Positions 17,027 through 64,000 of a stretch of 64,000 nt of DNA are shown in pieces (position 1 is the stretch's first letter; each line of letters opens with the position of its first letter). Source of the DNA: Octopus sinensis (taxonomy: Eukaryota); the NCBI RefSeq assembly GCF_006345805.1, contig NC_042999.1, positions 83,266,001 to 83,330,000 of the forward strand. Direction: 5' to 3'. The notes beneath the pieces were generated by a model. It searched no databases, had not been told where the DNA came from, and saw nothing but the letters and a program-made list of their open reading frames with translations. The position numbers and the translations under genes are program-made.

Positions 17027-17361
17027 TGAGTGTGTTTATGTATATATATGCACATATATTTCACACAATGATATCATATTGAAAACATTTGGTTCCCATC
17101 CTATCATCAAAGTTAAGCTGTGTTGGGCCTAGTTACTACTTAGTTGGCTGACCGTTTAGGGAACTAGGTTTTATAAACATCCTTTAGGTGTAGATGTAGC
17201 TGTGTGGTTAAGAAACTTACTTTCCTGTCATATGGTTTTGGGTTCAGTTCCATTGCAAGTTACCTTAGGCGACTGTGTTCTATTATAAATCTAACCCAAC
17301 CAAAGTTTTGCGTGCGGATTTGTTTGTCAGAAACTGAAATAAGCCCTTTGTGTGTGTGTGT

Positions 17362-17903: not shown

Positions 17904-18134
17904 TATTTCTTTACTACCCACAAGGGGCTAAACACAGAGGGGACAAACACTGACAGATAAACAGATTAAGTCGATTATATCGACCCCAGTGCATAACTGG
18001 TACTTATTTAATCGACCCCGAAAGGATGAATGGCAAAGTCGACCTCGGCGGAATTTGAACTCAGAACATAGCGGCAGACGAAATGCTGCAAAGCATTTCG
18101 CCCGGCTTGCTAACATTTCTGCCAGCTCGCCGCC
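17904..18134 (-). mobile_element. SINE, family A (ggcggcgagctggcaga...gagttcaaattccgccgaggtcgac...aaagaaata), full length
   Basis: Highly similar to 39014-39234 and 61851-62068. GAGTTCAAATT B-box-like motif. Confidence 0.85.
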
Positions 18135-18521
18135 GCAACAACCTTGCTTGGACTTGTACCTCAAAGGGGAACTTTCTAGATGTAATCCTGTGGTCATTCA
18201 TGACCAAAGGGGGTCTTTACTTTTCTTTATATACATACATACATGTGTCTGTGTGTGCATATCTGTATGTGTATATATAGCAGTATGTGAGTATGTGTTT
18301 GATGTATATGTTTATCTATTTGTGTATGCATAGCTGTATGTATCTAGAACTTTTCTTCTTAGTCTACTTGACTCTTGTTTTCTTTTTCACTTTTTTTACT
18401 GTTACCATTTAAATGTTTACTTAGTGTCATGTCTGTATTGTATAGTAAGTACAAGCTTGGTTAATGCCCTGGTGGTTAGTAGTTTATTCCAAGTTTACTA
18501 TTGCTTTTCATCTATACATAT

Positions 18522-38291: not shown

Positions 38292-39500
38292 TTAGGTGCA
38301 AAAATAATGACGGTTTTTATTTTAAAATTTGATGCTTATTTTGGAATAAACTTTCATTTAACTATGTTCATGTAACACACCATTTTGAAGTGCAGATTTT
38401 TTTTTATTGATTTGTGGTAATAGTTTTGCATTTACTGTTTCTTCTTGTTTATTTTAAGCTGTCAATAAAAAGCGAAGAAGAAAAACCCCAGTAAATTTGA
38501 GCGATTGTATTGTACGAGTTCAAAATGGAACTTAAAACGGTAGAAACTGGTTGCAATATCATCCAAACGTTTAGTCAAAGGAACGTCAAGAAAAGTGCAG
38601 CCCAGTATTGGTTCCACAGAGTAAAGACGCGAGCCTCGAGGAAAGTCGTGGCTGACCTTCAATCACTTGAAAGCCAGTGCTGAAATGAGCCACGTAATAA
38701 AAAAAAAAAAAAAAGCGAGAAATTGTAAAGGAACTAAACGGTAACCATTCAATAATTGTTCGACATTTGTACCACAGAGGATGTTATAGAAAAATGGTGT
38801 CACATGAGCTGAACGGAAATCTTTTAAAATCGCCATTAAGAAGTTTGCTCTGAACTTCTTTTGCATATCAAAAGCCATCTATTTCTCGATCTTACTATAA
38901 AGTGTGACAAAAATGGAAGTCTATACGGTAGCTATCAACATTCCGCACATTGTCGGGATTGAGCTGAAGCTACCCATTACATTCTCAAACAGAAGCCACA
39001 TTAAAAAGATATATATTTCTTTATTGCCCACAAGGGGCTAAACATAGAGGGGACAGACAAAGGGATTGAGTCGATTACATCGACCCCGGTGCGTAAATGG
39101 TACTTTATTTATCGATCCCTAAAGGATGAAAGGCAAAGTCGACCTCGGCGGAATTTGAGCTCAGAACGTAACGGCAGACGAAATACCGCTAAGCATTTCG
39201 CCCGGCGTGCTAACGTTTCTGCCAGCTCGCCGCCTTCAACATTAAAAGTATATAGTCATGGTTTGGTTGTCGCTAAGTAGAATCATCTAACACTATTTCT
39301 TGAATTTTGATGAAAAAAAAAATGCAGCTGAGGCGTATGATGAAGATCCGATAAAATACATCAAAAGTTCAACGTTTACATCCAGCATTGGCTAAATGGA
39401 AAGGACCAATTCTTCGTCATGACAAACACCAGACCCCATGACCCACAAATGACTGCAGAAATTAAATGAAATGGACTACAAAATTTGGTACAGGACTTCA
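38292..39500 (+). pseudogene. Decayed mariner (DD34D-type, Hsmar1-like) transposon interrupted by a SINE
   Basis: TIR-like ttaggtgcaaaaataatgacggttttt at 38292. Fragments: IVLYEFKMELK...QYWF, KW(V)SHELN, EVCSELLL...FLD...CD.KW, VMVW, KGPILRHD..RPH...KLNE. Multiple stops and frameshifts. Confidence 0.8.
39014..39234 (-). mobile_element. SINE, family A, inserted in the mariner relic
   Basis: Full-length copy flanked by an imperfect direct repeat (acattaaaaagatata / acattaaaagtatata), probably a TSD. Confidence 0.85.
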
Positions 39501-43450: not shown

Positions 43451-45131
43451 GTCCTTGTTTAGACTCAACAGGAAACAGAAGATCCCGTAGTCATCATAAG
43501 TACTATGCAAATCATAGAAATTATAATTGCATGTCTACAATAAATTCAAGGCCAATAACTCAGTATCGATTATATTGACACAAGTACGGGACTGTTAATT
43601 ACTTTTATCAATAATAGAAAGGCAAAAGGTGAAGATGACCCCGGCGGAATCTGAATTCAGAAGCTGAAAAACGCAAAACACTTTTTCCGATGTACTAGTC
43701 AACTACCACGAATAATAACTAGTGGACAGGTGGAAATTCCACGGTGTAAGCCAGCAAATATGAAAACGTTAATATATTGAACACAAGCAAGGAATTCCAA
43801 AAAATTTTTTTGAAATCCACTCATTTAATCAAAACCGTACTTTAATCGAATATAATTCGCCATCCCAGGCTCAGTCGAAGTTACTTACTAATTGAGATTA
43901 TTTTCATTTCTTTTCATTTCATTTCAGTGCGGCTACTATAGTTTGTAAACCAATTAATATATCTGCATATCTGTTGATATATCGATAAACTTACCTACAT
44001 ACGTTTCTACAACAGGCACAAGACCTGACAAGTTTTTTAGGGTTGGGGAGCTACTCAATTACATCGACCTTAGTGCTCAACTGGTACTTAGTTTATCGAC
44101 TCCGAGAAGAAGAAAGGCAAAGTCAGTCTCGGTGGAGTTTGAACACTGAACGCAAAGACGGACGAAATACTACTAGGTATTTTGTCCGACGTGACAACGA
44201 TTCTGGTTATAATTGAAATATAGATTGTATGAAAAGAAAACAAGAAAGAAACTAAGTTGCAAATTTACCGAGTGTAGAAGAAACTAAGAAAAAGAAAGCA
44301 CTTAAGAGATATAAAAATCAGCTATACTGATTCAGAAAATTGAGTGACAAAACTAAATAAAAGTTAAATTTAAAAGTACATATATTTTATTGTTTAGTCA
44401 ACGAGGTGTGCCCACGCTTCTCGCAGGGCCTCTATTGACATCTGGGGTAAAAATGAAAAGTGATATTGGTTTCGAATTATTTATAGATTCCATAAGAGTA
44501 TAAATGAAATGGAATAGCTATTACTTGGAGTAAAAGAAAACAGGTTATGAGTGTTATTTTCATTAAAATTTTACTCCAAAAGAACTACTTTCTCGGGTCA
44601 ACAAACTATTGTAAACTTATTTATCAAACAATACTAAATGAAGTATGAGGATTCTTTTCTTCACACAGTATTCAAAATTAATTGTTAAAATTAGAATATG
44701 TTAAAAATATTTGTTTACTTTGAAACTACTGTGGCTAAGAAGATTGTTATTCTTTCTTTAAAACAATAAATTTAGTCTCTCTCGCGCCTCCCACTTCCTC
44801 CGGTCATTCATTCTAAGTTTAAAGAGTTGTTACAAGTATATCGTTGAAGTTGAATTCACACTGTTTACTATATTCATAATCAAAAGACATCCAGTTTCCC
44901 CTGGTGGTTTATAATACCAAAGAAAAATTACCACTGGCAAACATGAGGAATAAAAGAATGTAAAGAAAATATGAATACGAAAACGTTTGTAATTGTCACT
45001 CTTGCATTTGTTTATCTTAGATGCAAGTATGCATAAAAAAAAATCTTTAAAAATTGGGAAATTTTTGCATGATATTTTAGCATGTTATTAAAGTAACGGG
45101 ACACACAAATGAAAATTGTCACCATTATTTC

Positions 45132-46969: not shown

Positions 46970-47137
46970 TCTGTCTTCCCTTCTCTGGATCTTTCCTTCT
47001 CCTATGTTTCCGACGAAGAGCTTCGCTCGAAACGTTAAACCCTCCTTCTTTCCTTCTTTCCTGAGCGTCCAATAATACTATATTTGTTCCACGTCCTCGC
47101 GTTATTGTGGTTTTTTTTTGTGCTTTCATGTTTGGAT

Positions 47138-47221
<84 letters not shown>

Positions 47222-47318
47222 CTTCTTTCCTTCTTTCCTGAGCGTCCAATAATACTTTATTTGTTCCACGTCCTTGCGTTGCTGTGTTTTTTTGTGTTTT
47301 CTTGTTTGGATTAACTTT
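46970..47318 (+). mobile_element. Penelope-type 3' terminal repeat remnant with minimal hammerhead-like motif; 3' part duplicated around a (TA)n tract
   Basis: 47006-47040: GUUU-CCGACGA-A-GAGC-UUC-GCUC-GAAACGUU-AAAC. Segment cctcc/ccttctttcc...tttggattaact occurs at about 47040-47142 and 47220-47317, each followed by TA repeats. Confidence 0.55.
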
Positions 47319-47332
47319 ATATATATACATAC

Positions 47333-47362
<30 letters not shown>

Positions 47363-47364
<2 letters not shown>

Positions 47365-50300
47365 CACAATCAAGGAACGGCCATAATAGGCCATTCACCC
47401 ACTAGAAATAACAGCCAAAGCTTCAACCGCAAATAAACATCAATTCCGTAAACCAGGAGAAAATTAAAAAAACATTTACCCTGTAATTTCTTATACGATG
47501 CACCGTTTCATCTACTGTTTAATGGTAAACTAACCTGATTAAATTAAATCAAGCCAATCTTCCATAGGCCCTTAGAATCATCAGTAAGAAATAGCCAAGT
47601 CGGAACAGATATTTTCACGAGGCATTTCCGACCCTGCCTCGGCAATATCTGACCTAAAATTTTCAAATCATCGCACTCGCGCCAAATTTATCGGCAGCAA
47701 ATAAATATAAGCCGCCGATTCCATTACGGAATTAGCCAGAAAATTCATAATTAATCAATATAGGGTGGCAAAAAATTTTGTAGAATTTTTTCGCCACCAG
47801 CGGCCTAGTGGGAAAAAATTAATAGTCATAGACCATTTTTAAGTTCAACATCACAATCAAGGAACGGCCCTAATAGGCCATTCACCCACTAGAAATAACA
47901 GCCAAAGCTTCAACCGCAAATAAACATCAATTCCGTAAACCAGGAGAAAATTAAAAAACATTTACCCTGTAATTTCTAGATGCACCGTTTCATCTACTGT
48001 TTAATGGTAACTAACCTGATTAAATTAAATCAAGCCAATCTTCCATAGGCCCTAGAATCATCAGTAAGAAATAGCCAAGTCGGAACAGATATTTTCACGA
48101 GGCATTTCCGACCCTGCCTCGGCAATATCTGACCTAAAATTTTCAAATCATCGCACTCGCGCCAAATTTATCGGCAGCAAATAAATATAAGCCGCCGATT
48201 CAATTACGGAATTAGCCAGAAAATTCATAATTAATCAATATAGGGTGGCAAAAAATTTTGTAGAATTTTTTCGCCACCAGCGGCCTAGTGGAAAAAATTA
48301 AATAGTCATAGACCATTTTTAAGTTCAACATCACAATCAAGGAACGGCATAATAGGCCATTCACCCACTAGAAATAACAGCCAAAGCTCAAACCGCAAAT
48401 AAACATCAATTCCGTAAACCAGGAGAAAATTAAAAAACATTTACCCTGTAATTTCTTATACGATGCACCGTTTCATCTACTGTTTAATGGTAAACTAACC
48501 TGATTAAATTAAATCAAGCCAATCTTCCATAGGCCCTTAGAATCATCAGTAAGAAATAGCCAAGTCGGAACAGATATTTTCACGAGGCATTTCCGACCCT
48601 GCCTCGGCAATATCTGACCTAAAATTTTCAAATCATCGCACTCGCGCCAATTTTCGGCAGCAAATAAATATAAGCCGCCGATTCCATTACGAATTAGCCA
48701 GAAATTTCATATTAATCAATATAGGGTGGCAAAAAATTTTGTAGAATTTTTTCGCACCAGCGGCCTAGTGGGAAAAAATTAAATAGTCATAGACCATTTT
48801 TAAGTTCAACATCACAATCAAGGAACGGCCATAATAGGCCATTCACCCACTAGAAATAACAGCCAAAGCTTCAACCGCAAATAAACATCAATTCCGTAAA
48901 CCAGGAGAAAATTAAAAAACATTACCCTGTAATTTCTTATACGATGCACCGTTTCATCATACTGTTTAATGGTAAACTAACCTGATTAAATTAAATCAAG
49001 CCAATCTTCCATAGGCCCTTAGAATCATCAGTAAGAAATAGCCAAGTCGGAACAGATATTTTCACGAGGCATTTCCGACCCTGCCTCGGCAATATCTGAC
49101 CTAAAATTTCAATCATCGCACTCGCGCCAAATTTATCGTAGCAAATAATATAAGCCGCCGATTCCATTACGGAATTAACCAGAAAATTCATAATTAATCA
49201 ATTAGGGTGGCAAAAAATTTTGTAGAATTTTTTTTTTTTTTTTTTTTGCCACCAGCGGCCTAGTGGGAAAAAATTAAATAGTCATAGACCATTTTTAAGT
49301 TCAACATCACATCAAGGAACGGCCATAATAGGCCATTCACCCACTAGAAATAACAGCCAAAGCTTCACCGCAATAAACACATCAATTCCGTAAACCAGGA
49401 GAAAATTAAAAAACATTTACCCTGTAATTTCTTATACGATGCACCGTTTCATCTACTGTTTAATGGTAAACTAACCTGATTAATTAAATCAAGCCAATCT
49501 TCCATAGGCCCTTAGAATCATCAGTAAGAAATAGCCAAGTCGGAACAGATATTTTCACGAGGCATTTCCGACCCTGCCTCGGCAATATCTGACCTAAAAT
49601 TTTCAAATCATCGCACTCGCGCCAAATTTATCGGCAGCAAATAAATATAAGCCGCCGATTCCATTACGGAATTAGCCAGAAAATTCATAATTAATCAATA
49701 TAGGGTGGCAAAAAATTTTTTAGAATTTTTTCGCCACCAGCGGCCTAGTGGAAAAAATTAAATAGTCATAGACCATTTTTAAGTTCAACATCACAATCAA
49801 GGAACGGCCATAATAGGCCATTCACCCACTAGAAATAACAGCCAAAGCTTCACCGCAAATAAACATCAATTCCGTAAACCAGGAGAAAATTAAAAAACAT
49901 TTACCCTGTAATTTCTTATACGATGCACCGTTTCATCTACTGTTTAATGGTAAACTAACCTGATTAAATTAAATCAAGCCAATCTTCCATAGGCCCTTAG
50001 AATCATCAGTAAGAAATAGCCAAGTCGGAACAGATATTTTCACGAGGCATTTCCGACCCTGCCTCGGCAATATCTGACCTAAAATTTTCAAATCATCGCA
50101 CTCGCGCCAAATTTATCGGCAGCAAATAAATATAAGCCGCCGATTCAATTACGGATTAGCCAGAAAATTCATAATTAATCAATATAGGGTGGCAAAAAAT
50201 TTTTAGAATTTTTTCGCCACCAGCGGCCTAGTGGGAAAAAATTAAATAGTCATAGACCATTTTTAAGTTCAACATCACAATCAAGGAACGGCCATAATAG

Positions 50301-52101
50301 GCCATTCACCCACTAGAATAACAGCCAAAGCTTCAACCCGCATAAACATCAATTCCGTAAACCAGGAGAAAATTAAAAAACATTTACCCTGTAATTTCTT
50401 ATACGATGCCCGTTTCATCTACTGTTTAATGGTAACTAACCTGATTAAATTAAATCAAGCCAATCTTCCATAGGCCCTTAGAATCATCAGTAAGAAATAG
50501 CCAAGTCGGAACAATATTTCACGAGGCATTTCCGACCCTGCCTCGGCAATATCTGACCTAAAATTTTCAAATCATCGCACTCGCGCCAAATTTATCGGCA
50601 GCAAATAAATATAAGCCGCCGATTCCATTACGGAATTAGCCAGAAAATTCATAATTAATCAATATAGGGTGGCAAAAAATTTTGTAGAATTTTTTCGCCA
50701 CCAGCGGCCTAGTGGGAAAAAATTAAATAGTCATAGACCATTTTTAAGTTCAACATCACAATCAAGGAACGGCCATAATAGGCCATTCACCCACTAGAAA
50801 TAACAGCCAAAGCTTCAACCGCAAATAAACATCAATTCCGTAAACCAGGAGAAAATTAAAAAACATTTACCCTGTAATTTCTTATACGATGCACCGTTTC
50901 ATCTACTGTTTAATGGTAAACTAACCTGATTAAATTAAATCAAGCCAATCTTCCATAGGCCCTAGAATCATCAGTAAGAAATAGCCAAGTCGGAACAGAT
51001 ATTTTCACGAGGCATTTCCGACCCTGCCTCGGCAATATCTGACCTAAAATTTTCCAATCATCGCACTCGCGCCAAATTTATCGGTAGCAAATAAATATAA
51101 GCCGCCGATTCCATTACGGAATTAACCAGAAATTCATAATTAATCAATATAGGGTGGCAAAAAATTTTGTAGAATTTGTTTTTTTTTTTTTTTTTTTTTG
51201 CCACCAGCGGCCTAGTGGGAAAAAATTAAATAGTCATAGACCATTTTTAAGTTCAACATCACAATCAAGGAACGGCCATAATAGGCCATCACACCCACTA
51301 GAAATAACAGCCAAAGCTTCAACCGCAAATAAACATCAATTTCGTAACCAGGAGAAAATTAAAAAACATTTACCCTGTAATTTCTTATACGATGCACCGT
51401 TTCATCTACTGTTTAATGGTAAACTAACCTGATTAATTAAATCAAGCCAATCTTCCATAGGCCCTTAGAATCATCAGTAAGAAATAGCCAAGTCGGAACA
51501 GATATTTTCACGAGGCATTTCCGACCCTGCCTCGGCAATATCTGACCTAAAATTTTCAAATCATCGCACTCGCGCCAAATTTATCGGCAGCAAATAAATA
51601 TAAGCTGCCGATTCCATTACGGAATTAGCCAGAAAATTCATAATTAATCAATATAGGGTGGCAAAAAATTTTGTAGAATTTTTTCGCCACCAGCGGCCTA
51701 GTGGGAAAAAATTAAATAGTCATAGACCATTTTTAAGTTCAACATCACAATCAAGGAACGGCCATAATAGGCCATTCACCCACTAGAAATAACAGCCAAA
51801 GCTTCAACCGCAAATAAACATCAATTCGTAAACCAGGAGAAAATTAAAAAACATTTACCTGTAATTTCTTATACGATGCACCGTTTCATCTACTGTTTAA
51901 TGGTAAACTAACCTGATTAAATTAAATCAAGCCAATCTTCCATAGGCCCTTAGAATCATCAGTAAGAAATAGCCAAGTCGGAACAGATATTTTCACGAGG
52001 CATTTCCGACCCTGCCTCGGCATATCTGACCTAAAATTTTCAAATCATCGCACTCGCGCCAATTTGGCGCGAGTGCGTGCCACCCTATATTGATTAATCA
52101 T
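47363..52101 (-). mobile_element. Tandem array of ~485-bp hammerhead-ribozyme units (retrozyme-like), ~9.7 copies, inserted in a (TA)n tract
   Basis: Unit starts (atcacaatcaagg) at 47363, 47850, 48330, 48811, 49306, 49790, 50274, 50755, 51257, 51744. The last unit is truncated near 52061 and followed by two short inverted pieces of the unit. (TA)n on both sides. Each unit has a type I HHR motif on the minus strand. Confidence 0.9.
47486..47592 (-). ncRNA. Type I hammerhead ribozyme, unit 1 of the array (repeated in every unit)
   Basis: Minus strand: stem I AUUUCUUA/UAAGAAAU (8 bp perfect); CUGAUGA; extended stem II (UCUA/UAGA, then 18-bp helix); GAAA; stem III ACGG-UGCA-UCGU; GUA cleavage triplet (cut between 47494 and 47493). 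One deviation: position 10.1-11.1 is U-U rather than the usual G-C. Confidence 0.8.
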
Positions 52102-52114
52102 ATATATATATATT

Positions 52115-52150
<36 letters not shown>

Positions 52151-52151
52151 G

Positions 52152-52186
<35 letters not shown>

Positions 52187-52742
52187 TTATTATATATATA
52201 ATACTATATATCTATATATTATATCCCTGTTCAAGCGAAACGAATAAGTGACATCTCGAATACGAGAGTAACCAATACTAGTGCATCTTTGGCATGGATA
52301 ACGGAATGAGAACAATCTACATAAAATCTCGGTTAAATGAGAATGCGCAAAAAGTATTTGATGCTTCCCTACTAACATCTCAGGTTCTCTTTCGGTGCTT
52401 TCTTGGAGCAAAGCAAAACCAAGTTCATCAAATGCGGGGCATTTTTTTCTTCCATACAAGACTAGTTTGAATTTTATCTTCTTCATATAAACTATGCGAC
52501 CACCCCATCCTTTATTTATTTTCTTTTTACATCTGATTAAAACGACGACTTCGAATATCGCCCATTTTGCATCGAACAAAATTACTGTTGGTCCTAATTT
52601 TATCTACGAGCCGCCACTGCACATCACTGTTTTTAAGGGACGATAAGGAGCTCCCTGATAGGTAAAATTATATGGTCATAGATGGAACGCCTTTTATTAT
52701 ATGCCATCGAAGCCGACCATTGGCACTGAACAGCAACAACAA

Positions 52743-55855: not shown

Positions 55856-56295
55856 GGACGTCACGAAGCGTACAATAAAAAAAAAATACGAAGCACAAGT
55901 GCATGGAACATGATCTATTCATTAGTTTCGTATTTCGAGCATTTAACAACAATATACGCTTTCGATTAAACAGTTGCTCCCGTAAAGTCTAGGCTTAGTA
56001 GCCCTCCCTGTTTGTTTTCACTGTCTTGTTCGTGTTACCAATTTTGACCCTCCTCAAAATCTGAAATTTTATATTATTTTCCGGAGCAATTGTTTTATCC
56101 AAAGCGTATATTGTTGTTAAATGCTCGAAATACGAGACTAGAAAAACAGCTAACAACTGATGAAGGGTCGTTCTTTAAGTTGTTTGTTTTGCTTTCCATT
56201 TGTGTCTTTCGTTGTTCGAAACAATTGTTCATGTTAATGTACTCGTGCTTCGTATTTTTTTATGTACACCTTTCGTGACATCCTGTGCGCACATA

Positions 56296-57989: not shown

Positions 57990-59052
57990 ACATGCTCATA
58001 TATATTTAAATGAAAGTTTAACAGATTTTTACAGTTTCAATGATAGATTGGATCTGTAGTCTTCGAATTAGTTTTCTTCATTCTGGTTTTGAGAAGTCTA
58101 ATAACTCAAGATTGGTATTTAGGCAGAGTGTTACGTATCTCAGGACTCCAATAATTACAGGTATGAATCTGGATAGAGTAACTGCAGTTTTCTCAATAGT
58201 TCAGCATAGGTATTATCTTTTCCACTGATCATCAGCTTTATGTTAACATCCGCTGGGCAGCTAATTTTCACAACTGTGCACTGTTTCTCTTCTCTATCCC
58301 AAATCATTATATCAGGTCTGCTGTGCCTACATTTTATTGGGGTCTTCACTGGTACATTCCACCAATATTCCTTTCTATTATGAGTGGCTATGGCTTCTAC
58401 CATATTGTGGGTTCTTATTTCTTTGTCTTCGGGAATATCCTTCCTACGGATTTCATTATAGAGTGTCCTCGCTACAATAGCATGTCTCGCTGGTACATAA
58501 ACCGTGATGACATTTTCGGACAACTGTTTATGATGTGGGTGATATCTTTAGTGTGAACTCTAAAAAGTCTGCATCGGTTGCCACAGTTTACTGATCTTCC
58601 TGCATCTCTATCCCGTTTGTGTATCAGGTATTTGGTTGATATTTCCTGTTCCTGGATTGCAAATGCATACCTTTCAAAGTGGGAGGTAGTAATCCGGCTA
58701 TTCGTCCATAATAAACTGCTTTGATGATCGATGTTACAATCATCACGGAGATTTCTACTAACATATCCATGTATAGTCTTCTGCTCATAAAGGCTCATCT
58801 TTTCATCTCATGCATATTCTTTGCATGAAGTTTTAAGTCATCCACAAAGAAACAGTGTGTAATTTTGGCATTTCTGTTTCCTTGAGAACCAGTGAGATAT
58901 CCTTCAGACTTCCTTAACATGAATGACAAGGGGTTTACAGGAAGTATAAACAACATCACAGAGAGGCTGTCTCCTTGGAATATGCCTTTGCGATATTGTA
59001 TTCTTTCGGTGATAATACAGTCACCTTTTGTGTTCAATTTCAAGATGGTGGC
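57990..59052 (-). pseudogene. 5'-truncated, internally deleted R4/Dong-type (RLE) non-LTR retrotransposon
   Basis: RT motifs RKGIFQGDSLS and HCFFVDDLKL; decayed CCHC knuckle (CRL...THIINSCPKM); RHAIVAR; PD-(D/E)xK endonuclease (SRPDIMIWDREEKQCTVVKISCPAD); C-terminal IPVIIG...LQIQSI...KI. Frameshifts and stops present. 3' UTR runs into (CATA)n. Confidence 0.9.
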
Positions 59053-59748: not shown

Positions 59749-59783
<35 letters not shown>

Positions 59784-59963
59784 ATATAATATATATTATA
59801 TATATTATATATATATATATATAAAATAAATATAAGAGAGTGGTCACTATATGGCTCACTCTAGCACCAGTTAATCCAAAAGGTTTCGACCACAAAAATA
59901 CATGTTCCCCATGAAAGCCAGTACGATGTTAGCTCACACGGACAGGGCAAATTGGATTTCATC

Positions 59964-60059
59964 CAGATAGTTTTGCTGAGGAGCTACAAGTGGATTTTTT
60001 TTGTAAGTAAAATTACATTTAATTCATTAATAGCGAAACAATTGTCCAAAAATAATCTG
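59964..60059 (+). ncRNA. Type I hammerhead ribozyme, copy 1
   Basis: UUUUG-CUGAGGA-GCUA...UAGC-GAAAC-AAUU-GUC-CAAAA. Distal stem I CAGAU/AUCUG. Canonical G10.1-C11.1; GUC cleavage after 60046. Confidence 0.9.
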
Positions 60060-60485
60060 TATTTTTGTTATTTTTTATTTGCCCTGTCAGTGTGAGCTAA
60101 CAATGTTACTGGCTTTCATGGGAAACATGTATTTTTGTGGTCGAAACCTTTGGATTAACTGGTGCTAGAGTGAGCCATATAGTGACCACTCTCTATATTT
60201 ATTTTGTAAAAAATATTATAATATATATAATATATAATAATCCAGGTTTTCGGAGCACAGGCCACTTGGTGTTGAATAGATATACTATTAATTAGTATCT
60301 AATTCTCTCACCCTTATTAATTAATTATAATTATGCTGCCATTTATTTCTAAATGCTGTATTGTTTTCCGTGAAAGTTTGGCGCGCTGTTAGTTGGGGCA
60401 TTTGAATTATAACGTCGAGTAATCAATGAACCACACGGTAGTTATCGTTATGGTAAAATCTGCGTGTGATTGAGTGGATTTCATC

Positions 60486-60582
60486 CAGATAGTTTTGGCT
60501 GAGGAGCTACAAGTGGATTTTTTTTGTAAGTAAAATTACATTTAATTCATTAATAGCGAAACAATTGTCCCAAAATAATCTG
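60486..60582 (+). ncRNA. Type I hammerhead ribozyme, copy 2
   Basis: UUUUGG(60493-98)-CUGAGGA(60499-505)-GCUA...UAGC-GAAAC(60558-62)-AAUU-GUC(60567-69)-CCAAAA; distal CAGAU/AUCUG. All core positions canonical. Confidence 0.92.
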
Positions 60583-60873
60583 TATTTTTGTTATTTTTTA
60601 TTTGCCCTGTCCGTGTGAGCTAACAATCGTACTGGCTTTCATGGGAAACATGTATTTTTGTGGTCGAAACCTTTTGGATTAACTGGTGCTAGAGGACATA
60701 TAGTGACCACTCTCTTATATTATTTTGAAAAATATTATAATATATTATAAAATATTATATAATCCAGGTTTCGGAGCACTAGGCCACTTGGTGGTGAATA
60801 GATATACTATTAAATTAGTATCTAATTCTCTCACCCTTATTAATTAATTATATATATATATATATATATATAG

Positions 60874-60908
<35 letters not shown>

Positions 60909-61750
60909 ATTATATATTGTATATATATATATAATCTTTTACTTGTTCCAGTCATTAGACTGCAGCCATGCTAGGGCACCTCCTTGAACAATTTTTCTAG
61001 TCAGATGTATCGACCCCCAGTACTTACTTCTTTAAAGCCTGTATTTGTTCCATCAGTCTTTTGCCGAAATGCTAAGTTACGGGGATGTAAACATGCCAAT
61101 ACCGGTTATCAAGTAGTGGTGACGGACAAACGCACATACACGCACACATACACGCACACATACACATACATACACACACTCATACACACACACACACGCA
61201 TATATATATATATACATATATACAACGGGCTTCTTTCAGTTTCCATCTACCAAATCCACTTAGAAGACTTTAATCGGCCCAAAGCTATAGTAGAAGGCAC
61301 TTACCTAAGGTGCCACGCAGTGGGACTGAACCCGGAATAATGTTATTGGGAAGCAAACTTCTTATCAAACAGAAACGCCTGCGCATACATACATATACAC
61401 GCCGGCACGCGCTAGTGCAACCAGTCACAGTACTTCATAGCATATCCCTTTCCGGTATTTGATACTGAAGAGCAGATAACCACTTCGAAATGCATGCATC
61501 CACCAGTCTGGTTCAATGGTGCTTCGAACTAACTTGGTGTGTTTACGCCTACTTGTCTACAGTGAGAAAGGTTCTCTATGACAAAATACAGCCAGTAGCT
61601 TTCTTAGGGTTCGAGCATGCCTCAAGCATATGTGAACTCAAGATCTCCAGTCAGCCTCATAAAACGTCTCTAGCATACTAACAAATGCTCAGCTCAAGAT
61701 CAAAGTAAAGATACTGAGTGTGTAGCTGTGTGCACGCGTGTGCGTGTGCA

Positions 61751-61790
<40 letters not shown>

Positions 61791-61850
61791 TGTGTGTGTG
61801 TGTGTGTGTGTAAACACATATATGTATGTATATATATACACACACGCACG

Positions 61851-62068
61851 GCCGAAACGTTAACGCGCCGGGCGAAATGCTTAGCGGTATTTCGTCTGTC
61901 GCTACGTTCCGAGTTCAAATTCCGCCGAGGTCGACTTTGTCTTTCATCCTTTCAGGGTCGATAAATTAAGTACCAGTTACGCACTTGGGTCGATATAATC
62001 GACTGAATCCCTTTGTCTTTCCTTGTTTGTATCCTCTGTGTTTAGCCCCTTGTGGGTAGTAAAGAAAT
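61851..62068 (+). mobile_element. SINE, family A, slightly 5' truncated
   Basis: Highly similar to the two minus-strand copies. Confidence 0.85.
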
Positions 62069-62904: not shown

Positions 62905-63220
62905 TCGTTTAGGCTTAGCAGCCCTTCCTATTTGTTTTCGCTGTCCTGTTTGTGTTACCAATTTTAACCCCCAGTAAAATTCCAAATTTTATTTAATTTG
63001 CTTTGCGGGAGCAACTGTTTTATCGAAAGCATATCTCGTTGTTAAATGCTTGAAATACGAGACTAGAAAAACAGCCAACAACTGTTGAAGGGCCGTTTTT
63101 GTGTTGTTTGTCTTGTTTTCTACTCGTGTCTTTCGTTGTTCGAAAAATAGTTCATATTCCAGGTACTCGTACTTCGTATTTTTTGTTGCACACGTTTCAT
63201 GACGTCCTCCCCCCCCCACA
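62905..63220 (+). mobile_element. Second, more diverged copy of the 55980-56296 element, ending in (TA)n
   Basis: Collinear similarity from taggcttag(c/t)agccc through ggagcaa...aaatgct(c/t)gaaatacgagactagaaaaacagc to tttc(a/g)tgac(g/a)tcct. Core degenerated to CTGTTGA / GAAAAATAGTT. The 5' boundary is uncertain. Confidence 0.7.
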
Positions 63221-63234
63221 TATATATATATATA

Positions 63235-64000
63235 TAGGGTAAGGAAGCAAAATTTACAATATTTCGAGGCAGGGATTGAAAGACAGTGTATGACCAATTA
63301 TTTTATTGAAAGTTATGAGAATTTATTTGCCACAAGAAAATTTACATAATAGAAAATGTTTTTATTCTATGTGTCCTTCTTTCTCAATAACTGCCTTCAC
63401 ATGCTTCCTGAAACTTGTACAAGTGTTCCTATAATATTCGGGAGACAACTTCTCCCATTCTTCTGTAATAGTATCTTTAAGAGAGTCGACATTACTGTGT
63501 GATGTTCTATTGGTAGCATATTCTAAAACGCCCCAAATAGCATAATCCAGAGGGTTTAGATCTGGGCTAGAAGGCGGCCATAAACATGATTCCCAAAAAT
63601 CGCTAAAGTTAGATTTGCAGAAATCTTGTATTTTTCTGGCTGTGTGGGCTGGAGCACCATCCTGTGTCCATACATAATTACCATCTGGGTAGTTTGCTTT
63701 AAGCCATGGCAATACCTGGTATCTCAGAGTCTTGTAGTAAATATTAACATTGGTCTTTTCATCAGCTTTGTAGAATTTTATAGGCATTTTCTTTCCATCG
63801 GAAGCCACAACACCAAAAGCCATAACTTCTGCAGGATGTTTTGTTTTGAATGTCCCCTTAACCTCAGCTGTTGATTTTGCAATAAATCTGTCATTTCTGC
63901 GGTTTAGAACAGCATCGACAGTGAAGATCTTTTCATCTGAAAAGATTGTTACAATGGAGGACTTTTTCTTGAACCATGTAATAATTTTCTTGCACCTCTC
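63235..64000 (-). mobile_element. maT/DD37D DNA transposon, right part, inserted at a TA repeat
   Basis: Contains the transposase ORF. Putative terminus TA|TAGGGTAAGGAAGCAAAATTTAC at 63235 next to (TA)n; the other TIR is outside the window, so the boundary is unverified. Confidence 0.7.
63362..64000 (-). CDS. Tc1/mariner-superfamily transposase, DD37D (maT) type, C-terminal 212 aa; ORF continues past the window edge
   Basis: The frame is open from 64000: ...IFSDEKIFTVD...VMAFGVVASDG...WTQDGAPAH...WPPSSPDLNPLDYAIW...EGHIE*. There are 37 residues between the second and third catalytic Asp. Confidence 0.92.
   Translation of the reverse strand, partial: ERCKKIITWFKKKSSIVTIFSDEKIFTVDAVLNRRNDRFIAKSTAEVKGTFKTKHPAEVMAFGVVASDGKKMPIKFYKADEKTNVNIYYKTLRYQVLPWLKANYPDGNYVWTQDGAPAHTARKIQDFCKSNFSDFWESCLWPPSSPDLNPLDYAIWGVLEYATNRTSHSNVDSLKDTITEEWEKLSPEYYRNTCTSFRKHVKAVIEKEGHIE

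What the first reader, a model, noticed from the sequence alone, without database searches (positions are those of the whole stretch)
47363..52101. The 485-bp 'satellite' is a tandem array of hammerhead ribozymes (retrozyme-like circRNA element)
Seen: the minus strand of each unit folds into a type I hammerhead. It has a perfect 8-bp stem I (AUUUCUUA/UAAGAAAU), CUGAUGA, stem II, GAAA, a near-palindromic stem III (ACGG-UGCA-UCGU) and a GUA cleavage triplet. About 9.7 copies lie head-to-tail inside (TA)n, and neither end of the array is at a cleavage site. Known: tandem type I HHR repeats in animals (newt satellite 2, schistosome Sm-alpha, coral/mussel/axolotl retrozymes) are transcribed, self-cleave to monomers and circularise; short palindromic stem III favours double-hammerhead cleavage. 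Inference: this is a non-autonomous retroelement copied by rolling reverse transcription of a ~485-nt circular RNA. I am not aware of a description in cephalopods. Caveat: 10.1-11.1 is U-U, not G-C.
Basis: partly seen in the sequence, partly recalled or inferred. Interest (0 to 1): 0.93.

Follow-up and report, generated by a model that had tools for sequence, protein, structure and literature searches.

The report
Octopus tandem repeat carrying hammerhead ribozymes
A 485-bp repeat copied about ten times head-to-tail in an octopus genome carries a self-cutting "hammerhead" RNA motif on its minus strand, so it is most likely a new octopus family of the known animal "retrozyme" mobile elements.

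Summary
TRF finds a 485-bp tandem array at 47363-52062 with 9.7 copies, lying inside (TA)n. On the minus strand, 8 of 10 units carry a complete type I hammerhead. It has an 8-bp helix I, CUGAUGA, a long helix II, GAAA, a near-palindromic 12-nt helix III and a GUA cleavage triplet.

My relaxed hammerhead descriptor hits dinucleotide shuffles of the window 0.007 times per shuffle, and never with a helix I of 7 bp or more.

The same descriptor found a second, unrelated 523-bp tandem element on the plus strand (59783-60852), also inside (TA)n. Its two hammerheads match Rfam Hammerhead_1 (25.9 and 28.4 bits, gathering score 34).

Rfam does not detect the 485-bp family. That family has U.U at positions 10.1/11.1, but a cleaving axolotl retrozyme hammerhead has the same mismatch.

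Both elements show Penelope-like insertion traits: a (TA)n target, tandem copies, inverted fragments at the 5' end, and ends away from the cleavage site.

Transposase homology places the window in Octopus.

Best reading: a new family of metazoan non-LTR retrozymes. Cleavage, RNA circles and reverse transcription were not tested. A 4-unit variant periodicity shows that part of the array grew at the DNA level, or from a multimeric template.

The parts
47363..52062 (-). Tandem array of 485-bp units, 9.7 copies. The sense strand, which carries the hammerhead, is the minus strand.
   Evidence: TRF. Unit alignment. Most units differ from the consensus by only 1-3 substitutions plus 1-nt indels; the two variant units have 11 and 6.
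47486..47592 (-). Type I hammerhead of the first unit. Helix I strands are at 47585-47592 and 47486-47493. CUGAUGA is at 47578-47584, GAAA at 47506-47509, helix III at 47495-47506 and A17 at 47494. The predicted cut is 47494|47493. Equivalent motifs have CUGAUGA at 48058, 48543, 49025, 49518, 50003, 50484, 50968, 51471 and 51956 (plus-strand start of TCATCAG). The motifs at 48058 and 49025 are defective.
   Evidence: Direct reading. Descriptor hits. Shuffle control. Folding.
52063..52101 (.). Sense-5' junction. It holds short fragments of the unit in inverted orientation (GGCGCGAGTGCG, then TGCCACCCTATATTGATTAAT). With the last unit these form a 12-bp palindrome.
   Evidence: Compare the 'inverted 5'-truncated copy' of Penelope-like elements.
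47318..47364 (.). (TA)n flank at the sense-3' end of the array. The last unit bases, ...GUGAU, merge into (AU)n.
52100..52224 (.). (TA)n flank at the sense-5' end of the array.
   Evidence: (TA)n tracts cover only about 3% of the window.
59783..59952 (-). Second element: inverted, 5'-truncated partial copy. It is the reverse complement of 60600-60761 at 88% identity.
   Evidence: Self-BLAST.
59953..60852 (+). Second element: 1.7 direct copies of a 522/523-bp unit. Unit 1 is 59953-60474 and the truncated unit 2 is 60475-60852 (94% identical). (TA)n lies on both sides (59749-59823 and 60849-60933).
59964..60059 (+). Second element, hammerhead 1. CUGAGGA is at 59976-59982, helix II is GCUA/UAGC with a ~45-nt loop, GAAA is at 60035-60038, and helix III is the palindrome ACAAUUGU. 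The triplet is GUC and the cut is 60046|60047.
   Evidence: Descriptor. Rfam RF00163 at 25.9 bits, E=1.1e-4, full model.
60486..60582 (+). Second element, hammerhead 2. CUGAGGA is at 60499-60505 and the cut is 60569|60570, which is 523 nt after the first cut. Compared with copy 1, helix I has an inserted G in its 5' strand and an A-to-C change in its 3' strand. This lengthens the helix from 5 to 7 bp.
   Evidence: Descriptor. Rfam RF00163 at 28.4 bits, E=1.7e-5. Sequence.

Best explanation
The array is a genomic copy of a non-autonomous retroelement of the metazoan 'non-LTR retrozyme' kind, in an Octopus genome.

Proposed mechanism:
1. The minus strand is transcribed as a multimer.
2. Neighbouring hammerheads pair through their near-palindromic helix III into double hammerheads.
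3. [quoted passage not shown]
4. A host RNA ligase circularises the monomers.
5. Monomeric circles or uncut multimers are copied by the reverse transcriptase/endonuclease of an autonomous element, most likely a Penelope-like element that nicks AT-rich or (TA)n DNA. Priming is by A/T microhomology at internal positions of the RNA.
6. This yields a more-than-unit-length tandem insertion with an inverted fragment at its 5' end.
7. After insertion, the array was reshaped by duplication of a 4-unit block.

Shown here:
- the motif and its non-random nature;
- the tandem, ORF-less, AT-rich architecture;
- the (TA)n flanks and the inverted 5' fragments;
- the predicted double hammerhead;
- the 4-unit periodicity;
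- a second, independent hammerhead-bearing element of the same build 7.7 kb away.

Inferred from published work on related elements: transcription, cleavage, circularisation and the identity of the mobilising enzyme.
For: - Motif: complete hammerhead core plus three helices in 8 of 10 units.
- Chance control: 0.0067 descriptor hits per shuffled window, and none with helix I >=7 bp.
- Double hammerhead: the cofold of two copies forms a 12-bp helix III and is 10.5 kcal/mol better than two monomers. In the monomer MFE, UGAUG/CAUCG pairing blocks the core, and the competent fold is 3.4 kcal/mol higher.
- Self-pairing: the 487-nt consensus circle folds to -142.8 kcal/mol, z=-4.7, with 64% of bases paired.
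- No coding capacity: the longest open frame of a consensus trimer is 60 aa and has no homologue. GC is 37%.
- Second family: the element at 59783-60852 is recognised by Rfam Hammerhead_1. This shows that the genome hosts such elements and that Rfam loses them at window scale when helix II is long.
- Target: both elements sit in (TA)n, which covers about 3% of the window.
- Junctions: both have inverted 5' fragments.
- Published match: Penelope-like elements show (TA)n or AT-rich targets, partial tandems, inverted 5' copies, internal initiation and extension of both DNA strands.
- Published definition: retrozymes are tandem repeats with type I hammerheads; consensus lengths of 51-972 bp have been reported, and one family has a U.U at the base of helix II.
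- Taxon: the transposase fragment is 89-93% identical to Octopus bimaculoides proteins.
Against: - Rfam does not detect a hammerhead in the 485-bp family, even on a 141-nt slice at E<=10.
- The 10.1/11.1 pair is U.U instead of the highly conserved G-C.
- Helix I (8 bp before its internal loop) and helix II (U.U plus 4 bp before its internal loop) do not have the canonical 6/4-bp geometry. No loop-loop contact can be recognised.
- The units are nearly identical, so there is no covariation or conservation test for this family.
- No other copy was found in the rest of the window, in the metagenome scan or in the protein collection.
- No Penelope-like RT lies in the window; the only RT remnant is a degenerate LINE.
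- The literature describes Naiad Penelope-like elements of cephalopods as long inactivated.
- The 4-unit periodicity argues against a single rolling-circle event.
Confidence: 0.68

Rival explanations
1. The repeat descends from a retrozyme or Penelope-like terminal sequence, but its hammerhead is now inactive (U.U at 10.1/11.1, non-canonical periphery). The array is simply a minisatellite that grows and homogenises by unequal crossing-over, with no RNA circle and no current mobility.
For: Rfam finds no match. The 10.1/11.1 position is a U.U mismatch. A 4-unit higher-order periodicity shows DNA-level amplification. Two of ten units already carry disabling indels. No second locus of the family was found.
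Against: A U.U at the base of helix II is compatible with cleavage in the axolotl. Eight of ten motifs are intact and the helix I pairing is perfect. The near-palindromic helix III, which allows dimer cleavage, is preserved.
Confidence: 0.2
2. The retroelement assignment is right, but the template was a linear multimeric transcript copied from an internal start by a Penelope-like RT. The array was not made by rolling-circle reverse transcription of a monomeric circular RNA.
For: The array ends lie at A/T microhomologies away from the cleavage site. The variant units recur every 4 units, as expected if a pre-existing heterogeneous array was transcribed and copied. A purified Penelope-like protein initiates internally and extends both DNA strands.
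Against: A hammerhead that cleaves efficiently would leave few long multimers. Published models, and the abundance of circles in other animals, favour circular templates. Post-insertion duplication would explain the periodicity equally well.
Confidence: 0.3
3. The array consists of pseudo-LTR fragments of an autonomous Penelope-like element, not a separate non-autonomous family.
For: Hammerheads of this style (short palindromic helix III, odd base of helix II) sit in Penelope-like pseudo-LTRs. Xenopus retrozymes are sister to pseudo-LTRs.
Against: Ten consecutive 485-bp units contain no RT or GIY-YIG coding sequence. The only RT remnant in the window is LINE-like and lies elsewhere.
Confidence: 0.05
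4. The hammerhead-like motif is a chance arrangement in an ordinary satellite.
For: There is no Rfam hit and no covariation data for this family.
Against: Shuffles of the window give 0.0067 descriptor hits per window, and none with helix I >=7 bp. A second, unrelated tandem element in the same window carries Rfam-supported hammerheads. Both elements share the same insertion architecture.
Confidence: 0.02

Closest known systems
Metazoan non-LTR retrozymes (Cervera & de la Pena 2020, PMC7229834; newt satellite 2, axolotl Rtz_331/353, mussel and coral repeats)
   Same: Both are head-to-tail repeats of a few hundred bp with one type I hammerhead per unit. Both lack an ORF and LTRs, have low GC, and give a highly self-paired predicted circle. 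Helix III is weak and palindromic, which favours dimer cleavage. Axolotl HHR_Amex2 also has a U.U at the base of helix II.
   Different: Helix II carries a ~70-nt extension, against 4 bp plus a loop in canonical motifs. Helix I is 8 bp before its internal loop. Helix III is 4 bp plus a tetraloop. No recognisable loop1-loop2 contact is present. The Rfam model does not score it. The unit shows no sequence similarity to described families. The host is a cephalopod, for which I found no description.
Hammerheads of Penelope-like elements (Cervera & de la Pena 2014, PMC4209133) and Penelope-like insertion architecture (Craig et al. 2021, PMC8557442; Frangieh et al. 2024, PMC11167929)
   Same: Both have a palindromic helix III, an irregular base of helix II, a larger helix II, and activity expected only as dimers. 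Insertions lie in (TA)n or AT-rich DNA, as partial tandems with an inverted 5'-truncated copy. Their ends are set by internal initiation.
   Different: No RT/GIY-YIG ORF lies between the repeats. The repeat number (about 10) is far above a pseudo-LTR pair. The min-HHRs of Penelope-like elements keep G10.1-C11.1, which this family lacks.
Second element in this window (59783-60852)
   Same: It has the same build: a type I hammerhead with a long helix II and a palindromic helix III, tandem units of about 0.5 kb, (TA)n flanks and an inverted 5' fragment. It shares a 26-nt motif (CACCCT-TATT-ATTAATTAT-AATT) 213 and 262 nt after the cleavage site, and a (TA)n junction falls within that motif in both elements.
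   Different: Apart from that motif there is no sequence similarity. It has canonical G10.1-C11.1 and a GUC triplet, is recognised by Rfam RF00163, has only 1.7 units, and is on the opposite strand.

Membership tests
Hammerhead ribozyme, type I | Conserved core: C3 U4 G5 A6 N7 G8 A9, G12 A13 A14, A15.1-U16.1, and H17 (not G) | tested here: met
   CUGAUGA ... GAAA ... U-A| is read directly in all ten units. Eight units are intact over the whole motif.
Hammerhead ribozyme, type I | Three helices around the core, with helix I open and helices II and III closed | tested here: met
   Helix I is 8 bp and perfect. Helix II is UCUA/UAGA plus a 14-bp extension. Helix III is ACGG/UCGU with a UGCA loop.
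Hammerhead ribozyme, type I | G10.1-C11.1 pair closing helix II (highly conserved, though not universal) | tested here: not met
   The pair is U.U in every unit. [quoted passage not shown]
Hammerhead ribozyme, type I | Score at or above the Rfam RF00163 gathering threshold (34 bits) | tested here: not met
   There is no hit for the 485-bp family at gathering score or at E<=10. The second element scores 25.9 and 28.4 bits, also below threshold.
Hammerhead ribozyme, type I | Loop 1 - loop 2 tertiary contact | tested here: inconclusive
   Internal loops exist in helix I (GCU/UA after 8 bp) and in helix II (after U.U plus 4 bp). The geometry is not canonical and no tool here scores tertiary contacts. 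Mussel retrozyme hammerheads also lack the archetypical contact nucleotides.
Hammerhead ribozyme, type I | Mg-dependent site-specific self-cleavage | not testable with these tools
   This needs in vitro transcription of minus-strand monomer and dimer.
Metazoan non-LTR retrozyme | Head-to-tail tandem repeats of roughly 50-1000 bp with a type I hammerhead in the repeats | tested here: met
   The array has 9.7 copies of 485 bp, with 8 of 10 motifs intact. The published length range is 51-972 bp.
Metazoan non-LTR retrozyme | No protein-coding capacity, no LTRs, low GC (<45%) | tested here: met
   The longest open frame of the consensus is 60 aa with no homologue. The flanks are (TA)n, not LTRs. 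GC is 37%. PBS and PPT motifs were not searched for.
Metazoan non-LTR retrozyme | Monomer predicted to form a stable, highly self-paired circle | tested here: met
   The circular MFE is -142.8 kcal/mol, z=-4.7 against shuffles, with 64% of bases paired. The antisense strand is also structured (z=-7.0), so this does not identify the strand.
Metazoan non-LTR retrozyme | Expression as linear and circular monomeric RNA | not testable with these tools
   No transcriptome data are reachable.
Metazoan non-LTR retrozyme | Dispersed copies at several loci (mobility) | tested here: inconclusive
   No other copy was found in the window, in metagenome contigs or through predicted proteins. No Octopus whole-genome search was possible. 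Insertion into (TA)n with a rearranged 5' junction suggests an insertion event.
Metazoan non-LTR retrozyme | Co-occurrence with Penelope-like elements in the same genome | not tested
   This rests on the literature only: Naiad families are reported in Octopus spp., as old remnants. No Penelope-like RT lies in this window.
Autonomous Penelope-like element (pseudo-LTR) | RT plus GIY-YIG ORF between the terminal repeats | tested here: not met
   No such ORF lies in or next to the array.

The most novel reading that the evidence does not exclude
The two unrelated hammerhead-bearing families share a 26-nt motif (CACCCT-TATT-ATTAATTAT-AATT) about 210-260 nt after the cleavage site, and in both a junction with (TA)n falls within this motif. 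The motif could be the internal initiation or recognition site used by one (TA)n-targeting Penelope-like reverse transcriptase. That would be the first sequence-level link between animal retrozymes and the enzyme that mobilises them. It would also imply recent Penelope-like activity in octopus, because most array units differ from the consensus by only 1-3 substitutions.
Probability: 0.12. Interest if true: 0.6.

Novelty: new member of a known kind. Interest (0 to 1): 0.4.

Why it matters
Retrozymes are a natural route to abundant circular RNAs made without splicing, and their mobilising enzyme is still only inferred.

This locus would extend them to cephalopods. There, only raw Rfam hammerhead counts have been reported, in the giant squid.

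It would add natural hammerhead variants that standard covariance-model scans miss. In both families helix II is very long, and the 485-bp family also has a U.U at 10.1/11.1.

Two independent insertions sit in one window with clean (TA)n flanks and inverted 5' fragments. That makes the window a convenient place to study how such elements integrate.

It also warns annotators that '485-bp satellites' in octopus assemblies may be mobile elements.

Tried and rejected
1. Rfam at gathering score on the whole window found only a 5S rRNA-like hit. The E<=10 searches on 5.4 kb and on a 141-nt slice gave no hammerhead for the 485-bp family. I do not treat this as refutation. The second element's hammerheads were also missed at window scale and appeared only on short slices.

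2. The metagenome scan with CTGATGATTCTA-N(50-80)-TAGATGAAAC returned 11 loci. All were chance matches, with no helix I complement and no homology.

3. I searched the protein collection with the 60-aa open frame of the consensus unit, hoping to reach other genomic or transcript copies. It returned nothing.

4. I fetched Octopus bimaculoides and O. vulgaris loci through the transposase homologues to look for an orthologous empty site. They are other copies of the transposon, not orthologous flanks.

5. Strand asymmetry of folding energy (-142.8 sense versus -105.4 antisense) looked like evidence for the sense strand. The difference is compositional: antisense shuffles average -73 and the antisense z-score is -7.0. 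I dropped this argument.

6. Conservation of the hammerhead relative to the rest of the unit cannot be tested within the array. There are 13 variant cells in 108 columns against 90 in 400, and most are 1-nt indels.

7. The resemblance between the duplicated left-flank segment (47043-47141 and 47220-47318) and the second element was swamped by (TA)n matches. It was not established.

8. No tRNA-like part was found that would suggest a SINE. The bacterial promoter/terminator scan is not informative for a eukaryote.


Full report
**Observation.** Tandem Repeats Finder reports one array at 47363-52062. It has period 485, 9.7 copies, 95% matches and 3% indels. (TA)n tracts lie at 47318-47364 and 52100-52224.

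Read on the minus strand, each unit contains AUUUCUUA-CUGAUGA-UUCUA...UAGAU-GAAA-CGGUGCAUCG-UA|UAAGAAAU. In hammerhead numbering this gives:
- helix I: 8 perfect pairs;
- the C3-A9 box;
- helix II: opens with a U.U at 10.1/11.1, followed by UCUA/UAGA and a long extension that contains a 14-bp hairpin;
- G12-A14;
- helix III: ACGG/UCGU capped by UGCA;
- the cleavage triplet GUA.

In the first unit the motif spans 47486-47592.

All ten units carry CUGAUGA. One unit (47593-48072) has lost 5 nt, including the cleavage site. Another (48558-49039) has a 1-nt insertion next to 11.1. The other eight pass a descriptor that I wrote in the style of RNAmotif.

**Is it more than chance?** I ran the same descriptor on 300 dinucleotide-preserving shuffles of the whole 64-kb window, on both strands. 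The descriptor asks for:
- CUGANGA;
- GAAA within 120 nt;
- at least 3 pairs at the base of helix II, tolerating one mismatch;
- a helix III hairpin closed by A15.1-U16.1;
- H17;
- helix I of at least 5 bp.

The shuffles gave 0.0067 hits per window, and none with a helix I of 7 bp or more. The observed helix I is 8 bp. A chance motif is therefore very unlikely.

**Rfam.** The Rfam library does not support the call for this family. There is no hammerhead hit at gathering score on the window. There is none at E<=10 on 47000-52400. There is none at E<=10 on the 141-nt slice 47470-47610.

The likely reasons are the ~70-nt insertion in helix II, the U.U pair, and a 12-nt helix III where the model has 8 positions. 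I could not measure each penalty.

**A second element in the window.** The descriptor also hit the plus strand at 59976 and 60499. This is a different tandem element:
- an inverted partial copy at 59783-59952;
- unit 1 at 59953-60474;
- a truncated unit 2 at 60475-60852, 94% identical to unit 1;
- (TA)n on both sides.

Its hammerheads are more canonical. They have CUGAGGA, G10.1-C11.1, a GCUA/UAGC helix II with a ~45-nt loop, GAAA, a perfectly palindromic helix III (ACAAUUGU) and a GUC triplet.

On 141-nt slices, Rfam Hammerhead_1 (RF00163) aligns its full model to both. The scores are 25.9 bits (E=1.1e-4) and 28.4 bits (E=1.7e-5). Both are below the gathering score of 34, and both alignments place a 40-nt insertion in loop II.

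These two motifs were invisible in the whole-window scan. So the Rfam negative for the 485-bp family is weak evidence.

The two copies differ in helix I by an inserted G in the 5' strand and an A-to-C change in the 3' strand. Together these extend the helix from 5 to 7 bp. That is a compensated change, though it rests on only two sequences.

The two cleavage sites are 523 nt apart.

**Folding.** For the 485-bp family the monomer MFE is -33.2 kcal/mol. It keeps helices I and II but pairs UGAUG of the core with CAUCG of helix III. The cleavage-competent fold is 3.4 kcal/mol higher.

Two copies cofold to -76.9 kcal/mol, against -66.4 for two monomers. The cofold is an exact double hammerhead with a 12-bp intermolecular helix III that contains two G.U pairs. 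This fits the behaviour described for newt, axolotl and Penelope-like hammerheads, which cleave poorly as monomers and well as dimers.

The consensus 487-nt circle folds to -142.8 kcal/mol (z=-4.7, 64% paired). The antisense circle is also far more structured than its own shuffles (z=-7.0). Folding therefore does not identify the functional strand, and I withdrew that argument.

**Array anatomy.** Most units differ from the consensus by only 1-3 substitutions plus scattered 1-nt indels; the two variant units, 4 and 8, have 11 and 6. Many of the indels lie in homopolymer runs and may be assembly errors. There is therefore no power to compare conservation of the motif with the rest of the unit.

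The informative variants are periodic. Units 4 and 8 share a deletion, three substitutions and an expanded A-run. Units 2 and 6 share a substitution.

A single rolling-circle copy of one 485-nt circle cannot produce a 4-unit period. Either a 4-unit block was duplicated in the DNA, or the template was itself a heterogeneous multimer.

**Junctions.** Neither end of the array is at the cleavage site. The sense 3' end (...GAUUGUGAU|(AU)n at 47363) lies 131 nt after it.

The sense 5' end (52063-52101) consists of two short fragments of the unit in inverted orientation. With the last unit they form a 12-bp palindrome.

In the second element, the direct copies end in an internal UUAAUUAAUUA stretch. 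A 170-nt inverted copy sits at the 5' end.

(TA)n tracts cover about 3% of the window. Two independent elements both lying inside (TA)n is therefore unlikely without a target preference.

**Comparison with published work.**
- Metazoan non-LTR retrozymes are defined as short tandem repeats with type I hammerheads, low GC, no LTRs and no ORFs. They are expressed as self-paired circular RNAs. They are known from cnidarians, a mussel, amphibians and other phyla (PMC7229834).
- Reported consensus lengths range from 51 to 972 bp (bioRxiv 10.64898/2026.07.22.740005).
- Axolotl HHR_Amex2 has a U.U mismatch at the base of helix II and still cleaves.
- Penelope-like elements carry hammerheads with a palindromic helix III and an irregular base of helix II (PMC4209133).
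- Penelope-like elements insert as partial tandems with an inverted 5'-truncated copy. (TA)n is a preferred target for Naiads (PMC8557442).
- A purified Penelope-like protein prefers AT-rich DNA, starts reverse transcription inside the RNA, and extends both DNA strands (PMC11167929).

The junction features seen here match that behaviour. They do not discriminate between a circular and a linear multimeric template.

**Taxon.** The Tc1/mariner-like transposase fragment at 63365-64000 (minus strand) is 89-93% identical to Octopus bimaculoides proteins and 86% identical to an O. vulgaris protein. The window therefore comes from an octopus.

I found no description of retrozymes in cephalopods. The giant squid genome paper lists 235 Rfam Hammerhead_1 hits without further analysis.

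**A shared motif.** The only similarity between the two families is a 26-nt stretch (CACCCT-TATT-ATTAATTAT-AATT). It lies 213 and 262 nt after the respective cleavage sites. Four of 500 shuffles reach its score.

In both elements a junction with (TA)n falls inside this motif. In the 485-bp family it is the inverted fragment at 52080-52100. In the second element it is the 3' end at 60852. This may mark a preferred initiation site, or it may only reflect A/T microhomology. It is a lead, not a finding.

**Verdict.** It is a new octopus family of a known kind of element, the metazoan non-LTR retrozyme. Its hammerhead is atypical in periphery and at 10.1/11.1.

Self-cleavage, circles and mobilisation remain inferences. 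The claim that the array arose purely by rolling reverse transcription of a monomeric circle is not supported by the 4-unit periodicity.

Noticed in passing
window 59783-60852 (+): A second, unrelated hammerhead-bearing tandem element with a 523-bp unit and 1.7 copies, plus a 170-nt inverted 5' copy, inside (TA)n. Rfam Hammerhead_1 scores 25.9 and 28.4 bits on short slices. It has canonical G10.1-C11.1 and a GUC triplet.
   Followed up: yes
window 52080-52100 and 60309-60334 / 60832-60852: The two hammerhead families share a 26-nt motif (CACCCT-TATT-ATTAATTAT-AATT). It scores 33 against a shuffle mean of 22.8, and 4 of 500 shuffles reach it. In both elements a junction with (TA)n falls inside it.
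   Followed up: partly
window 49040-49532 and 50983-51485 (units 4 and 8); 48073-48557 and 50018-50498 (units 2 and 6): The array has a 4-unit higher-order periodicity. Units 4 and 8 share five variants, including an A-run expanded to about 20 nt. Units 2 and 6 share one substitution.
   Followed up: yes
window 17061-17179 (+): A 5S rRNA-like sequence scores above the Rfam gathering score (45.7 bits against 38). It is AT-rich (37% GC) and its terminal helix is broken. It is probably a pseudogene or the head of a 5S-derived SINE.
   Followed up: no
window 58158-59052 (-): A degenerate, frameshifted LINE-type reverse transcriptase remnant (RVT_1 E=3.5e-5, weak zf-RVT). It ends about 700 bp from the second hammerhead element. 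It has no GIY-YIG domain, so it is not a Penelope-like element.
   Followed up: partly
window 63365-64000 (-), runs off the window end: A Tc1/mariner-like DDE_3 transposase fragment, 89-93% identical to Octopus bimaculoides proteins and 86% to an O. vulgaris protein. This identifies the source as an octopus.
   Followed up: yes
window 47043-47141 and 47220-47318: A ~99-bp segment ending in ...GTTTGGATTAAC is duplicated at 91% identity, and each copy is followed by (TA)n, immediately left of the array. It could be the tail of another element that ends in (TA)n, or a by-product of the insertion.
   Followed up: partly
window 55987-56284 and 62907-63208: Direct repeats of about 300 bp, 82-85% identical, lie 6.92 kb apart. 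They bracket the LINE remnant and the second hammerhead element. They may be two copies of a dispersed repeat or old terminal repeats.
   Followed up: no
window 17932-18330, 39005-39277, 43989-44213 (+); 61703-61951 (-): Several copies of a dispersed SINE-like repeat give the recurring pseudo-peptide ...KDERQSRPRRNLNSE..GRRN.AKHFARRANVSASSPP. The repeat is also present in the fetched O. vulgaris locus.
   Followed up: no
window, whole: The sequence is very rich in microsatellites, with 53 (TA)n tracts covering about 3% of the window plus many ACAT/GTAT-type arrays. Overall GC is 34%.
   Followed up: partly
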